A stretch of DNA of 64,000 nucleotides from IMGVR_UViG_3300020122_000238:124001-188000; one strand, 5' to 3'; positions 27,727 to 31,845 are shown, counted from the stretch's first letter. Notes: generated by a model from the sequence alone, not told the origin. Numbers and translations: made by a program.

Positions 27727-28080
27727 ATGATCACAGATCCCGAAGAAGCTCTCACGCACATTCAACGGGTGGCGGCAGAAGGTCGCCTCGAATGGGCCCC
27801 CACAGATCAGGTTACCTCTCTTGATGCGGAGATCCAAGAGATATTCTCTGAGGTCTACGGTGCTCTCATGGGGAGACTGGTAAAGAAAGGGGGCATCATG
27901 GCGACCGATCGCTCCTACATTGGGGATGTCCTCGACTTTGAGGGCGACGAGTACACAGCCAAATCGGAAGCTGCCCTCAAGACGGCTTCCGATAAGCTCG
28001 GTATCCCTCTGAGTGCGGACAACCTCTTTGTGACGGCTGCCCTGCTTCTTCGGGCAAAACGAGCCACGTCCCACAGCTAA
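27727..28080 (+). CDS. Hypothetical protein
   Basis: 117 aa ORF in operon. Confidence 0.55.
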   Translation: MITDPEEALTHIQRVAAEGRLEWAPTDQVTSLDAEIQEIFSEVYGALMGRLVKKGGIMATDRSYIGDVLDFEGDEYTAKSEAALKTASDKLGIPLSADNLFVTAALLLRAKRATSHS

Positions 28081-28084
28081 ATTC

Positions 28085-28090
28085 GGTGTA
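28085..28090 (+). promoter_or_regulatory. Class A element GGTGTA
   Basis: 10 nt before ATG 28101. Confidence 0.65.
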
Positions 28091-28100
28091 GACGTTTCGG

Positions 28101-28688
28101 ATGAAGAAACGTCTCCGCATTTTGATGGACATTGATGGTGTTGTGGCCGATTTCATGGCCACTGCCCTCGACATCGTGGAAAAGCTCTCGGGGGATCGAT
28201 ACCACCCCACCGATTTCCACGCGTGGGACATCTTCGAGACCATCCCCCGAGAGCACGAGCTGGACTTCCTCGACGCATTCAAGGTCAAGGGGACCTGCCT
28301 TGGGATTCCCCTCATCCCGGGCTCCAAGGAAGGCGTCGATGGGCTGCGGGCTCGCGGCGATCTCTACGTCGTGACCTCCCCGATGGGGTGCGTCGAGACT
28401 TGGTCCCATGAGCGGGATGCCTGGCTGAAGCAGCACTTCGAGATCCCTACCTCGAAAATCATACACACATCGGCCAAGTACGTCTGTGCGGGGGACTGGC
28501 TCATCGACGACAAGCCGGCGAACATAACCCCCTGGCTGGAGCACAACCCGAACGGGAAAGCGATGCTCTGGCACCACAACTACAACGCCAAGGAAGACCT
28601 CGGGCCTCGCGTGCATCGAGTCCACAACTGGGTTGATGTCTTTGCCATCCTGGACGCGGAGACGACCACTGGACGATTCGATGACTGA
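28101..28688 (+). CDS. 5'(3')-deoxyribonucleotidase (HAD, NT5C family)
   Basis: DIDGVVADF, VVTS, WLIDDKP motifs. Confidence 0.85.
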   Translation: MKKRLRILMDIDGVVADFMATALDIVEKLSGDRYHPTDFHAWDIFETIPREHELDFLDAFKVKGTCLGIPLIPGSKEGVDGLRARGDLYVVTSPMGCVETWSHERDAWLKQHFEIPTSKIIHTSAKYVCAGDWLIDDKPANITPWLEHNPNGKAMLWHHNYNAKEDLGPRVHRVHNWVDVFAILDAETTTGRFDD

Positions 28689-28899
28689 GCTGCGAGATCG
28701 ATCTGGCGAGGTGTGTATTGATTCGAAGCTTGTGAGCTTCCTCTACGATCTCATGCGAGATCATCTTCCGCCGGGGGTTGTGGAGACCCTCGTTCAAAAT
28801 GCGTCGAATCCAGACGTGACCTACACAAATGGTTGGTTGGCATCTTATGCCGAAGACCTCGCCAAGAGACTCGGCGACACCCCCAAAAGGATCAAATGA
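28681..28899 (+). CDS. Hypothetical protein
   Basis: MTELRDRSG..., coupled to thyA. Confidence 0.5.
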   Translation: MTELRDRSGEVCIDSKLVSFLYDLMRDHLPPGVVETLVQNASNPDVTYTNGWLASYAEDLAKRLGDTPKRIK

Positions 28900-30014
28900 A
28901 GCAATATCAAGACGCAGTCCGACACGTCCTCGCCAACGGAACTCGCAAGGAGAATCGGACTGGGGTCGATACCCTATCGACTTTCGGATACTACTACGAA
29001 GTGGACCTCGCCGAGGGTTTCCCGCTCCTCACCACCAAGAACGTGAGCTGGAAGAACATCGTCGTTGAGCTTTTGTGGTTCCTCTCGGGTCAAACCGATA
29101 TCGCGATCCTCAAGCGCCACGGTTGCAAGTTCTGGGATGCTTGGGCGGACCCTGATACGGGCAAGGTCCCGAGCGCCTATGGCAACTTCTGGCGCAAGTT
29201 TCCGGTTCATCGTCAAGATGATCCGAAATCCCCCGCAGTCCAATCCAGGGGATCAGCCATTTCGCCTGACTTCAACGACCAGATCGCCTGGGTGCTCGCT
29301 GAGATGCGCAGGAACCCCATGAGTCGGCGGATGGTCGTCTCGGCTTGGGCTCCCGGAAACGCACAGACGAGCAAGCTCCCGCCCTGCCACTGCCTCTACG
29401 TGTTCAACGTGCAGAACGCGGACCCGACGCCGAGGTACGTGCATTACGGACACAATAGGGGAGAGGACCCTGTGTGCGGCAACTACAATGACGGCCGACG
29501 GGTTCTGCCGCACGGGGAAGGGATGAAGTATCGGGAGGCATGGTGCCCCGACTGCCAGGTCCTTCTCAACGGAGCGCGAGGGGGCGATGTCTTCAAGAAC
29601 CCTCCTGTGGGGGACGACCCGCGTCGCCTCTGCCTTCATTTGACGCAGAGATCGCTGGATGTAATGCTTGGCGCACCGTACAACCTCGCCTCGTACGCGC
29701 TGCTCATCGAGCTGTTCAGCCGGTTCACGGGAATCAAGCCTGGGATTTTCGGGCATTCCGTGGTCGACATGCACATCTACTGTGCCAAGCCCGATGGGTC
29801 TATGGCCGAATACGACCACACCCCTGGTGCTCGCGAGCAACTTACGAGAGAGCCCCGTCTTCTTCCTCGCCTCATCATCGATGACAGTATCAAGGACCTC
29901 AGCGATATCGAACGCCTGATGGATCCATCGGTCACTACAGAAGAAATCATGGGTCTCTTCCGCTTGGAAGGGTACAATCCACACCCGGCCATCAACTTCA
30001 AAGTTGCAGTCTGA
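28896..30014 (+). CDS. thyA: Thymidylate synthase with a Cys/His-rich insertion
   Basis: NRTG, FPLLTTK, ELLWF, SRRMVVSAW, LPPCH, QRSLD, DMHIY; ends FKVAV. Confidence 0.93.
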   Translation: MKQYQDAVRHVLANGTRKENRTGVDTLSTFGYYYEVDLAEGFPLLTTKNVSWKNIVVELLWFLSGQTDIAILKRHGCKFWDAWADPDTGKVPSAYGNFWRKFPVHRQDDPKSPAVQSRGSAISPDFNDQIAWVLAEMRRNPMSRRMVVSAWAPGNAQTSKLPPCHCLYVFNVQNADPTPRYVHYGHNRGEDPVCGNYNDGRRVLPHGEGMKYREAWCPDCQVLLNGARGGDVFKNPPVGDDPRRLCLHLTQRSLDVMLGAPYNLASYALLIELFSRFTGIKPGIFGHSVVDMHIYCAKPDGSMAEYDHTPGAREQLTREPRLLPRLIIDDSIKDLSDIERLMDPSVTTEEIMGLFRLEGYNPHPAINFKVAV

Positions 30015-30032
30015 TGTTCACTGTGCTACGTC

Positions 30033-30911
30033 TTGGACGTGGTGACTGAAGAGTTCCTCCGAAAGAAGTACCTTGGCGATCTGCTCTCCCTTCGGCAGAT
30101 CGCTTCTCTTTGTGGTGTGGCTGTCGGCACGATCCGCTACCACATGAAGCGCTTTGGGATTCCTCGCCGAACGAAATCCGAGGCCCTCTCTGGGGACAAG
30201 AACCCCATGCATGGGAAGACGAAGTCAGATGCGACCCGGCGGAAAACCTCAGAGACCCTTCAAGTCACAAATAAGGATCCTGATGTAAAGGCCCGCCGAA
30301 GCGCCTCAACTTCGGGGATCCGAAATCCCATGTATGGGAAAACACACACAGAAGAGGTAAAGGAAGCCGCACACACAAGGCTGAATTCTATACGACACAC
30401 CCCAGACTTTGTGTCAGCTCAAAAAGCTGCAATGCAACGACTGGAAGTCCGCCAAGCTCTCTCGGAGAGCGCCTCCCAAAGAGTGGGGGAGAAGAACCCC
30501 TTCTTTGGGCATGAGCATAGCTCCGAGACCAAGCAGAAAATAGCTCAAGCCAACCGAGGTCGTTTTCTAGGGGAGAAGGGTTCCAACTGGAAGGGCGGGA
30601 AGACTCGACTCTCAGCTCTGATTCGGAACTCCGAACCGGCAATCCGATGGCGAAAGGATGTCTTCAAGAGGGACGCCTATACTTGCCAGAGGTGTGGTCA
30701 AATTGGGGGTCAACTACAGGCGGATCACATTCAACCTCTTGCGGGGCTCCTCGACGAGCACTGCATCAAGACCCTCGAAGATGCGTTCAACTGTCCCACC
30801 CTCTGGGATTTGACCAACGGTCGGACGCTCTGCATTTCGTGTCACAAAAAGACGCCTTCCTACGCGGGCAACTATCAGAAGAATTATCCTGCGTTCAAGG
30901 TCGCGGTGTAG
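30033..30911 (+). mobile_element. Free-standing HNH homing endonuclease with NUMOD3-like repeats
   Basis: NPMHGK/NPMYGKTH/NPFFGHEHS repeats, CQRC, DHI, NGRTLCISCH; ends FKVAV like thyA. Confidence 0.85.
30905..30910 (+). promoter_or_regulatory. Class A element GGTGTA overlapping a stop codon
   Basis: 10 nt before ATG 30921. Confidence 0.6.
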
Positions 30912-30920
30912 GCTTTCACA

Positions 30921-31430
30921 ATGCGGGCTCTCGACTGCTTCCTTCTTGAGGTTATACCCACCGGGGCCCTTGCGTTTTTTGACTTGGACCTCGGGGTGTA
31001 CTATCGACTGGGGGAGTCGCCGGCTCATGGGTATCCCAACATCGTGGAAGGGGAGGTCCAGCGACGGATTCAACGTATATTGTGCGAGCCCGTCGCTGTC
31101 TTCGATAGGATACTTGAGGATCGCGCTATGGAAATGCTGTGGAGAGCAGCATTGTCAAATGGGTGGATCCCTGAAGACACCCTCACAACCTGGTTTGCAT
31201 CGCATGACCTCGATTACCAGGGGTGTCGTATAGTCCACAACGGCTGTGAATTGGCTGTTGTTACTCCTGATACTCTCGGGGGGATTATCAGAGCTGATGA
31301 CGTGCAAGACTCACCCTCTGCCAGAAACCTTCTCCTGTTCAACCTCAAGGGGGTTGTGAGGATTGGAGACACGGAAGCAGTTCAAAACGCACGTCCCACC
31401 TTGTGGGACAAACTTGGAGACGACCTATGA
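30921..31430 (+). CDS. Hypothetical protein with TLWDKL-acidic tail
   Basis: 169 aa after a class A element. Confidence 0.55.
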   Translation: MRALDCFLLEVIPTGALAFFDLDLGVYYRLGESPAHGYPNIVEGEVQRRIQRILCEPVAVFDRILEDRAMEMLWRAALSNGWIPEDTLTTWFASHDLDYQGCRIVHNGCELAVVTPDTLGGIIRADDVQDSPSARNLLLFNLKGVVRIGDTEAVQNARPTLWDKLGDDL

Positions 31431-31606
31431 AAATCGGTGATGTGGTACAGCTCAAGTCCGGCGGTCCCGATATGACCGTGTTAGAAAAAACTCGCGAAGA
31501 AGATCTCTGGTGGCTGTGCGCCTGGTTCCATGGAGCCAACGTGGTTCAAGAGAGCTTCCCCGAAGCAGCTCTCGACCACATGAAGACGAAGTGCGACTTC
31601 GAGTGA
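31427..31606 (+). CDS. YodC/DUF2158-family small protein
   Basis: MKIGDVVQLKSGGPDMTV...CAWF...FPEAAL. Confidence 0.8.
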   Translation: MKIGDVVQLKSGGPDMTVLEKTREEDLWWLCAWFHGANVVQESFPEAALDHMKTKCDFE

Positions 31607-31845
31607 GCCCTGAAGAACTCGCGGCGCACAAGAAGCGCTTCCTCGACACGATGGAGAAGGCCTGGCACGATATTGAGGTTGCTTACAAGCAGCCGCACTT
31701 CCCCGCTTGCAAGGCAACGGAAATGAACGTCTTCATCGAGATGAAGTTCGACACGAACGACTACGTGATCGCCTGCAACCCCATCATCCCCATGCAGGGC
31801 GATTTCAACTCTTGGGCGCCCACCAAGACCATCAAGACCGGGTAG
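31603..31845 (+). CDS. Hypothetical protein
   Basis: GTG start overlapping upstream TGA. Confidence 0.5.
   Translation: MSPEELAAHKKRFLDTMEKAWHDIEVAYKQPHFPACKATEMNVFIEMKFDTNDYVIACNPIIPMQGDFNSWAPTKTIKTG

What the first reader, a model, noticed from the sequence alone, without database searches (positions are those of the whole stretch)
29985..30911. Homing endonuclease inserted at the thyA 3' end with a duplicated, recoded FKVAV terminus
Seen: ThyA ends ...AINFKVAV (ttc aaa gtt gca gtc tga) and the following HNH ORF ends ...YPAFKVAV (ttc aag gtc gcg gtg tag). The downstream copy has the genome-typical GC-rich codons and contains the class A element of the next gene. Inference: the downstream copy is the original thyA end. 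The element inserted in the last codons, supplied a synonymous replacement end that would also destroy its own target, and adopted the old stop. This is intron-less homing caught in the act.
Basis: partly seen in the sequence, partly recalled or inferred. Interest (0 to 1): 0.62.

Follow-up and report, generated by a model that had tools for sequence, protein, structure and literature searches.

The report
Endonuclease gene duplicating the thyA end
A selfish DNA-cutting-enzyme gene sits in the last codons of a giant phage's thymidylate synthase gene and brings a spare copy of that gene's end, a trick known from fungal mitochondria and here found across a whole family of phage elements; it is old, not a fresh invasion.

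Summary
ThyA (28896..30014) ends FKVAV-TGA. The next ORF, an HTH/NUMOD3/HNH endonuclease (30039..30911), ends FKVAV-TAG. These are the only two FKVAV in six frames of the 275 kb phage contig.

The endonuclease belongs to a family of about 35 metagenomic proteins (43-94% identity). In 10 of 12 lineages inspected it lies directly 3' of thyA. The conserved core always stops at ...QKNY/F. What follows is a thyA-like tail in 5 lineages and decayed remnants in the others.

One occupied/empty pair (L129 vs L096) has the same genes on both sides. There the downstream tail is collinear with a genuine thyA end that overlaps the next gene's start codon. The upstream tail plus a short leader stays with the endonuclease even where thyA has been replaced by thyX (L134).

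"Caught in the act" is not supported. The cassette predates the split from its closest relative (dS 0.23, neighbours 0.28-0.50) and is under purifying selection (dN/dS 0.13). Codon choice cannot tell the two copies apart. Self-immunity by recoding is untested.

The closest analogue is the fungal mitochondrial mORF elements.

The parts
28896..30014 (+). thyA (thymidylate synthase, 372 aa), complete, with the canonical C-terminus ...GYNPHPAINFKVAV
   Evidence: Relatives end in [F/M/G][K/R]VAV.
29997..30014 (+). Upstream (replacement) copy of the thyA end, FKVAV plus TGA. Its last 12 nt together with the leader form a block that stays with the endonuclease gene.
   Evidence: The block is conserved in L002, L098 and L132, and in L134 where the upstream gene is thyX.
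30015..30038 (+). Cassette leader between the thyA stop and the endonuclease start. It contains the conserved GTTCACTG..GCTAC stretch.
   Evidence: Alignment A2. The weak hairpin over the start codon is not significant.
30039..30887 (+). Conserved core of the homing endonuclease: N-terminal HTH, three NUMOD3 repeats and a C-terminal HNH (CxxC..DH..N..CxxCH). It ends at ...QKNY.
   Evidence: dN/dS is 0.13 against L002.
30888..30911 (+). Displaced original thyA end (PA-FKVAV plus TAG), read in frame as the last 8 codons and stop of the endonuclease ORF
   Evidence: Homologs diverge exactly after ...QKNY/F. The same position in L129 is collinear with the thyA end of HEG-free L096. In L002 it is conserved at the end of the extra ORF, directly before the orthologous next gene.
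30905..30912 (+). GGTGTAGG gene-start element of the next gene, overlapping the old thyA Val codon and stop
   Evidence: 13 of 19 copies precede ORF starts by 4-13 nt.
30921..31430 (+). Next gene (169 aa, no family match), whose start signals overlap the displaced thyA end
   Evidence: The ortholog in L002/L007 is 76% identical.

Best explanation
This is a free-standing HNH-type homing endonuclease cassette resident at the extreme 3' end of a jumbo phage's thyA gene.

Layout of the unit: [replacement thyA end + stop + short leader] - [endonuclease ORF without a stop of its own] - [displaced native thyA end + native stop].

Why both copies are kept. In these phages the last codons of thyA do two jobs. 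They encode the conserved ThyA C-terminus (established knowledge holds it important for catalysis; not tested here), and they overlap the translation start signals of the next gene: an overlapping ATG in some phages, the GGTGTAGG element here. An insertion 4-5 codons before the stop would break one of these jobs unless the end is duplicated. The upstream copy keeps ThyA intact. The downstream copy keeps the next gene's start and incidentally terminates the endonuclease ORF.

Shown here: the anatomy; the family-wide association with the thyA 3' end; the empty/occupied comparison; linkage of the upstream copy to the endonuclease; purifying selection on the enzyme; and degraded copies in other phages.

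Inferred: the enzyme cuts or nicks endonuclease-free thyA 3' ends during co-infection, and recombinational repair copies the cassette in (intronless homing). Also inferred: the mutual divergence of the two copies helps prevent both self-cleavage and deletion by repeat recombination.

The insertion in this phage is old (it predates the split from L002/L007), not ongoing.
For: Anatomy and non-randomness.

Enzyme identity.

No intron.

Family: 35 homologs at 43-94% identity. Of 12 lineages inspected, 10 lie immediately 3' of thyA: the window, L002/7, L004, L098, L129, L130, L131, L132/3, L135 and L136. One lies next to thyX (L134) and one, at 35% identity, lies elsewhere.

Variable ends: all homologs share a core ending ...QKNY/F and then diverge. 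The ends PAFKVAV, ATKVAV, KRKPVAV, RRVAV and RPRKKAV are thyA-like; the others are short decayed tails.

Empty versus occupied: HEG-free L096 has the thyA end with the next gene's ATG overlapping its stop. In L129 the same downstream gene (71% identity) is preceded by the endonuclease, and collinearity with L096 begins at the Lys codon of KVAV.

Linkage of the upstream copy: the block made of the last 12 nt of thyA plus the leader is conserved in the window, L002, L098 (ThyA 62% identical) and L132, and persists upstream of the endonuclease in L134 where the neighbour is thyX.

Life-cycle stages: an internal deletion in L098, an N-terminal remnant fused to an HU-like gene in L097, and many empty sites.

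Selection: dN/dS 0.13 and dS 0.23 between the window and L002.

Three or more different downstream neighbours (169-aa gene, HU-like, DHFR and others) show that the association is with thyA, not with the downstream gene.
Against: No endonuclease-free allele close to this phage was found, so the empty site of this genome is inferred, not seen.

The five codons carry too little information to show which copy is foreign: distant empty alleles match both copies equally.

There is no clear co-conversion signature. The endonuclease and the thyA 3' part are only slightly less diverged from L002 (dS 0.23-0.26) than the least diverged neighbouring gene (0.28), and low dS goes with low dN/dS here.

The Pfam HNH score is below its cut-off.

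Confidence: 0.8

Rival explanations
1. Reverse polarity. The upstream end is the phage's native thyA end, and the downstream FKVAV copy is part of the mobile cassette: a short 3' homology arm that travels with the endonuclease and recombines with any thyA end.
For: thyA-like tails sit at the endonuclease's 3' end in lineages with unrelated downstream genes. The window's downstream copy is a perfect thyA end although it is not under ThyA selection, while L002's copy at the same place has 3 changes in 9 nt. After the first event, homing copies both tails from the donor anyway.
Against: In L129 the downstream tail is collinear with the thyA end plus next gene of empty L096, including the overlapping start codon. 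The block that demonstrably stays with the endonuclease, even beside thyX, is the upstream tail plus leader. The last 9 nt of the downstream tail are constrained by the resident next gene's start element.
Confidence: 0.12
2. Coincidence or convergence. The endonuclease's C-terminus happens to read FKVAV because the next gene's GGTGTAGG element fixes Val plus stop and the rest matches by chance.
For: GGTGTAGG explains the Val codon, the TAG and one base of the Ala codon.
Against: Phe, Lys, Val and Ala are not explained. FKVAV is expected 0.09 times in the genome and is seen only at these two stops, 897 nt apart. Four other family members end in VAV or KAV directly 3' of thyA. The homologous core ends before the tail.
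Confidence: 0.03
3. The segment is a group I intron (or an intein) near the thyA 3' end, with the downstream FKVAV as a tiny second exon or extein.
For: thyA and the endonuclease ORF share one frame, separated by a single TGA. Phage thyA/td genes are classic hosts of group I introns (PMC2988022).
Against: No ribozyme match was found even at E up to 1. ThyA is complete with its canonical end before the stop. In L129, L130, L135 and L136 the endonuclease start overlaps the thyA stop in another frame, and L004 has two in-frame stops, so neither a fusion nor read-through is conserved. Splicing would only replace FKVAV by FKVAV.
Confidence: 0.03
4. Domesticated nuclease. The gene is no longer mobile and is kept because it serves the phage, for example in excluding competing phages by cutting their thyA, or because its removal would damage the neighbouring genes' expression.
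For: It is vertically inherited since the split from L002, with dN/dS 0.13. There is no clear co-conversion tract. Both junctions are tied into translational signals.
Against: The distribution on the thyA tree is sporadic, with deleted and truncated copies, as in a gain-decay-loss cycle. Purifying selection is also what an actively homing gene shows. The two roles are not exclusive.
Confidence: 0.2

Closest known systems
Mobile endonuclease ORFs (mORFs) of fungal mitochondria that carry a replacement C-terminus: atp6 of Allomyces macrogynus; atp6, atp9, cox2 and nad3 of Glomus sp. (PMC3630166 and the Allomyces work cited there)
   Same: An endonuclease ORF is inserted in the 3' part of an essential gene. 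An in-phase inserted C-terminal piece completes the host protein. The native C-terminal piece remains downstream as a diverged duplicate. [quoted passage not shown] The duplicates differ mostly at synonymous sites.
   Different: Those elements are mitochondrial and encode LAGLIDADG or GIY-YIG enzymes, with duplicated pieces of 50-300 nt. Here the host is a phage, the enzyme is HTH/NUMOD3/HNH, the duplicate is only 12-24 nt, and the retained native end has a second job (the next gene's start signals). Foreign origin of the inserted end could be shown there by phylogeny. Here the piece is too short.
Free-standing homing endonucleases of T4-like phages and 'intronless homing' (seg and mob genes; review PMC2988022)
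   Same: A phage-borne endonuclease gene lies outside any intron or intein, between conserved genes of nucleotide metabolism. It is sporadically present among relatives, and it depends on neighbouring genes' expression signals.
   Different: T4 seg and mob genes lie in intergenic regions and duplicate no coding sequence. T4 Mob proteins have the HNH domain at the N-terminus (PMC2988022), whereas here it is C-terminal. The cleavage site and homing are unknown here.
Gene-splitting insertions of phage homing endonucleases (mobE in nrdA of phage Aeh1, cited in PMC5374615; mobA next to gene 60/39, table in PMC2988022)
   Same: A free-standing endonuclease is inserted inside a coding region of an essential nucleotide-metabolism or replication gene, with a device that preserves the host function.
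   Different: Those split the gene into two functional pieces. Here the host protein stays in one piece through a duplicated end.
I-TevI / I-BmoI: intron-encoded GIY-YIG enzymes that target thyA/td
   Same: The target gene is thymidylate synthase. NUMOD3 and HTH DNA-binding modules are present; the nearest solved structure by sequence is the I-TevI DNA-binding domain 1i3j, E 0.007.
   Different: Those are intron-encoded GIY-YIG enzymes that, from established knowledge, target the active-site coding region. Here there is no intron, the nuclease is HNH, and the site is the last codons of the gene.

Membership tests
Free-standing homing endonuclease gene (intronless homing type) | Encodes a nuclease of a homing endonuclease family with an intact catalytic motif | tested here: met
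   NUMOD3 71.7 bits; PHROG HNH endonuclease families down to E 3.9e-22; CxxC..DH..N..CxxCH visible and conserved in homologs. The Pfam HNH score is only 19 bits against a cut-off of 21.4.
Free-standing homing endonuclease gene (intronless homing type) | Not embedded in a self-splicing intron or an intein | tested here: met
   No Rfam match at E up to 1 over 28500..31800. ThyA is complete before its stop. The frame relation to thyA is not conserved in homologs.
Free-standing homing endonuclease gene (intronless homing type) | Present or absent at one and the same site among related genomes | tested here: met
   There are 10 occupied lineages, 2 degraded copies and 21 empty thyA alleles, plus an empty/occupied pair with the same flanks.
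Free-standing homing endonuclease gene (intronless homing type) | Co-conversion of flanking markers with the endonuclease gene | tested here: inconclusive
   Window vs L002: dS is 0.23 (endonuclease) and 0.26 (thyA 3' part) against 0.28-0.50 for neighbours. The saturated thyA 5' part marks a separate exchange.
Free-standing homing endonuclease gene (intronless homing type) | Site-specific cleavage of the endonuclease-free allele and preferential inheritance | not testable with these tools
   Needs enzyme assays and mixed infections.
mORF with replacement C-terminus (Allomyces/Glomus type) | Inserted in-phase C-terminal piece completes the host gene; the native C-terminal piece is left downstream of the endonuclease ORF | tested here: met
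mORF with replacement C-terminus (Allomyces/Glomus type) | The inserted piece is of foreign origin (closer to other lineages than the native piece) | tested here: inconclusive
   The 18-nt pieces match empty alleles equally. Supportive only: the upstream piece plus leader stays with the endonuclease across lineages, and the Ala codon GCA occurs in 5 of 10 occupied against 1 of 21 empty lineages (tallied by hand; hypergeometric p about 0.007, not corrected for phylogeny).
mORF with replacement C-terminus (Allomyces/Glomus type) | Mitochondrial element encoding a LAGLIDADG or GIY-YIG enzyme | tested here: not met
   This is a phage contig with an HNH/NUMOD3 enzyme. It therefore works like an mORF but is not a member of that group.
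T4 Mob-type HNH endonucleases | N-terminal HNH domain followed by a C-terminal DNA-binding region (PMC2988022) | tested here: not met
   The order here is HTH (residues 18-40), NUMOD3 three times, then HNH (218 onward).
Group I intron with endonuclease ORF | Ribozyme core flanking or containing the ORF | tested here: not met

The most novel reading that the evidence does not exclude
The duplicated thyA end is not just a scar but the working part of a self-contained homing cassette. The upstream copy keeps ThyA alive and, by its recoding, makes the occupied allele immune. The downstream copy acts as a portable micro-homology arm and a ready-made translational coupling site. Together they let the cassette home into any thyA 3' end whatever gene lies downstream, which would explain the at least five different downstream neighbours.
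Probability: 0.2. Interest if true: 0.7.

Novelty: new variant of a known kind. Interest (0 to 1): 0.5.

Why it matters
It shows how a selfish endonuclease can settle inside the end of an essential gene in a tightly packed phage genome, where that end also carries the next gene's start signals. Duplicating 12-24 nt keeps both functions.

This is the phage counterpart of the mitochondrial mORF architecture, and I found no phage report of it in the paper searches I ran.

The family offers a natural series: intact, truncated, internally deleted and empty sites, and even a fossil tail beside thyX. Such a series can be used to study the gain-decay-loss cycle of homing genes. It also offers a set of HNH enzymes that presumably recognise a conserved thyA sequence.

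For annotators, the repeated tail can cause mis-called gene ends and false 'fusion' proteins.

Tried and rejected
1. Group I intron or other RNA family: nothing relevant was found (the only match at E up to 1 was a eukaryotic lncRNA model at 20.6 bits against a gathering score of 40, read as chance; nothing for the split thyA loci).

2. Cultured phages: no close relative exists. The best ThyA matches are 32-40% identical.

3. Search for a close endonuclease-free allele of this phage, via ThyA and the 169-aa downstream protein in viral and metagenome contigs: only L002/L007, which are occupied, are close.

4. Codon test of which tail is native: not informative, 13.7 vs 13.9 of 18 matches.

5. 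Test for recent transfer by divergence profile: the striking 94% block from 29300 to 30886 turned out to be at or only slightly below local background. The real outlier is the saturated thyA 5' part.

6. ThyA tree to count independent gains: mostly unresolved.

7. Hairpin over the endonuclease start: not better than shuffles, z 0.52.

8. ORF113 of L002: no homolog anywhere, so insertion versus deletion could not be decided.

The same computation was redone from references.

Full report
**1. What is in the window**

The window is bases 124001-188000 of a 275,300-base IMG/VR viral contig. It has 58% G+C.

- thyA runs 28896..30014 and gives a 372-aa thymidylate synthase (Pfam E 1.7e-80). Its end...GYNPHPAINFKVAV, is the canonical end of this family.
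- After the TGA come 24 nt of leader and then an ORF to 30911.
- The ORF's start is most likely GTG 30039. The TTG at 30033 is CTG in the nearest relative, and the GTG aligns with the ATG of L134.
- The 290-aa product has an N-terminal helix-turn-helix, three NUMOD3 repeats and a C-terminal HNH motif. Its nearest solved relative by sequence is the DNA-binding domain of I-TevI, at E 0.007.
- It ends ...YQKNYPAFKVAV-TAG.
- Nine bases later the next gene (169 aa, no family) starts at 30921.

**2. Is the repeat more than chance?**

FKVAV occurs exactly twice in all six frames of the contig, both times before a stop. Expected counts are 0.09, or 0.002 with a stop.

The two 18-nt ends differ at 6 bases. 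These are every third codon position that can change without changing the protein, except that of Phe, plus the stop codon.

Two copies that had drifted apart in place to this degree should also have collected amino-acid changes in the copy that is not under ThyA selection. That copy has none. This argues that the two copies come from two different thyA lineages rather than from an old duplication in place (inference).

**3. The element in the downstream copy**

GGTGTAGG (30905..30912) is a genuine gene-start motif of this phage. Of its 19 copies, 13 are followed within 4-13 nt by the start of an ORF of at least 60 aa. One-base variants at the last position behave the same way.

The motif by itself explains only the Val codon, the TAG and one base of the Ala codon. 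It does not explain Phe-Lys-Val-Ala.

**4. Relatives**

ThyA searches gave 11 viral and 32 metagenomic loci.

- L002/L007 (ThyA 89% identical) carry the same endonuclease at 94% identity.
- L004 (ThyA 63%) carries a 60% identical one.
- L098 carries a copy with an internal deletion that leaves only the last 37 residues.
- L097 keeps only the N-terminal HTH, fused to an HU-like gene.
- The remaining complete alleles, 21 distinct lineages, are empty.

A protein search with the endonuclease found 35 homologs of 43-94% identity and similar length. I looked up eight of them:

| Locus | Identity to the window's endonuclease | Position |
|---|---|---|
| L129, L130, L131, L132/133 | 52-67% | directly 3' of thyA, usually in the order NT5C-thyA-endonuclease |
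| L135, L136 | 47%, 43% | directly 3' of thyA |
| L134 | 70% | 3' of a thyX gene |
| L137 | 35% | elsewhere |

The genes downstream of the endonuclease differ between lineages: the 169-aa gene, HU-like, DHFR and several orphans. The constant partner is therefore the thyA end.

**5. The 3' junction**

All homologs share a core that ends ...QKNY/F and then diverge.

- After the core come PAFKVAV (window), ATKVAV (L129), KRKPVAV (L130), RRVAV (L131) and RPRKKAV (L132).
- Elsewhere there are short unrelated tails such as KLV, KP, GRKR and RST.
- In each of the first five, thyA just upstream ends in its own KVAV or FKVAV with different synonymous codons.

The decisive comparison is L129 against L096. 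L096 has no endonuclease, and the ATG of its next gene overlaps the thyA stop. L129 has the orthologous next gene (71% identical) in the same overlap, but with the endonuclease's stop. The two loci are collinear from the Lys codon of KVAV onward. Upstream of that codon L096 continues as thyA and L129 continues as endonuclease.

So in L129 the downstream tail is the original thyA end, and the insertion point lies 4-5 codons before the stop. The window has the same layout, with the most complete remnant seen. However, I found no empty partner for it.

**6. The 5' junction**

The last 12 nt of the window's thyA together with the following leader form a block. It recurs in L002, in L098 (25 of 27 bases identical although ThyA is 62% identical) and in L132.

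In a slightly diverged form it also lies upstream of the endonuclease's ATG in L134. There the neighbouring gene is thyX (PF02511) and no thyA exists. A thyA-end fossil beside thyX shows that this copy of the end is physically linked to the endonuclease gene.

Other lineages have other 5' junctions. In L129, L130, L135 and L136 the endonuclease start overlaps the thyA stop. This copies the way the native next gene is coupled to thyA.

**7. Why a duplication?**

This section is inference from sections 3, 5 and 6.

The thyA end has two functions. It encodes the C-terminus of ThyA, and it overlaps the start signals of the next gene. A cassette entering there must restore both, and a duplicated end does so. 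As a by-product the endonuclease ORF, which has no stop of its own, runs into the old end and uses the old stop.

The part of the old end that overlaps the start element is conserved between the window, L002 and L004. The part upstream of the element is free to decay: it is LKFAV in L002 and KLV in L004.

**8. How old is it here?**

Window against L002:

| Region | dS | dN/dS |
|---|---|---|
| endonuclease core | 0.23 | 0.13 |
| thyA 3' part | 0.26 | 0.09 |
| five neighbouring genes | 0.28-0.50 | 0.15-0.33 |
| thyA 5' 300 nt | 3.65 (saturated) | 0.03 |

The cassette was thus already present in the common ancestor of the two phages, or was exchanged only slightly later. It is kept by purifying selection. 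The sharp identity step at about 29250 belongs to a separate replacement of the region 27727-29250, where L002 also lacks the NT5C gene.

The phrase 'caught in the act' is therefore not supported. What the window shows is an established cassette with an unusually well preserved scar.

**9. What could not be decided**

- Which of the two 18-nt copies is foreign cannot be read from codons. The 21 empty alleles match them 13.7 and 13.9 of 18 on average, although one (L115) is identical to the downstream copy.
- The Ala codon GCA is commoner in occupied lineages (5 of 10) than in empty ones (1 of 21). I tallied this by hand. Hypergeometric p is about 0.007, not corrected for shared ancestry.
- Whether the recoding gives immunity, where the enzyme cuts, and whether it still homes are all open.
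- L002/L007 have an orphan 113-aa ORF with its own AGGAG site exactly between the endonuclease core and the old tail. Whether that is an insertion there or a deletion here is unknown.

**10. Comparison with known systems**

The working principle matches the mobile endonuclease ORFs of fungal mitochondria. Those bring an in-phase replacement C-terminus and leave the native one downstream. They were first described for Allomyces atp6 and later for atp6, atp9, cox2 and nad3 of Glomus (PMC3630166).

It also matches the free-standing endonucleases of T4-type phages in being intron-less and placed among nucleotide-metabolism genes (PMC2988022). It differs from them in three ways: it sits inside a coding end, it duplicates that end, and its domain order is the reverse of T4 Mob proteins.

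My searches of the held literature turned up no phage case of this architecture. That is not proof of absence.

I therefore rate it a new variant of a known kind, of moderate interest.

Noticed in passing
window 30905..30912 and 18 other places in the 275 kb contig (e.g. window 15975, 16629): GGTGTAGG, and variants at its last base, lies 4-13 nt upstream of ORF starts in 13 of 19 cases. It is a phage-specific gene-start element (promoter, processing site or ribosome signal) of unknown nature. The same motif precedes genes in relatives L002, L004 and L005.
   Followed up: partly
window 27727..29250: Relative to L002/L007 this block is foreign. L002 lacks the three genes 27727..28896, including the NT5C 5'-nucleotidase. 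The first 300 nt of thyA are saturated at synonymous sites (dS 3.65), while the rest of thyA has dS 0.26. This is a recombination joint inside thyA, about 750 nt upstream of the endonuclease.
   Followed up: partly
window about 29420..29630 (ThyA residues about 176-245): ThyA carries a roughly 70-residue insertion with two Cys pairs (a possible zinc ribbon) between the catalytic Cys segment and the DV.LG.PYN segment. Relatives vary here, with ThyA lengths of 316-394 aa.
   Followed up: no
L011/L012 3296..4000; also L126 3830..4639: Other relatives have thyA interrupted mid-gene. In L011/L012 a 235-codon insertion is open in frame with thyA and has no Pfam match, and no Rfam family reaches its gathering score anywhere in L011. 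It may be an in-frame endonuclease-like insertion. L126 has about 810 nt between ThyA residues 106 and 127. thyA is a hot spot for several kinds of insertion in this phage group.
   Followed up: partly
L134 235..2920: The second-closest homolog of the endonuclease (70% identical) lies between a 486-aa thyX-type thymidylate synthase and an HU-like gene. It still has the last 11-12 nt of a thyA end and the leader in front of it. This is non-orthologous replacement of thyA by thyX next to the endonuclease.
   Followed up: partly
L097 1610..2140: The N-terminal HTH of a decayed endonuclease is fused in frame to the downstream HU-like DNA-binding protein (PF00216), giving a chimeric ORF.
   Followed up: partly
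L002/L007 6015..6356: An orphan 113-aa ORF with its own AGGAG site sits exactly between the endonuclease core and the old thyA tail, and ends LKFAV. It has no homolog in the viral contigs scanned, in this phage's contig, or in PHROGs.
   Followed up: partly
L098 4982..5117: An endonuclease copy with an internal deletion of about 740 nt. The leader is joined directly to the last 37 codons, followed by DHFR.
   Followed up: yes
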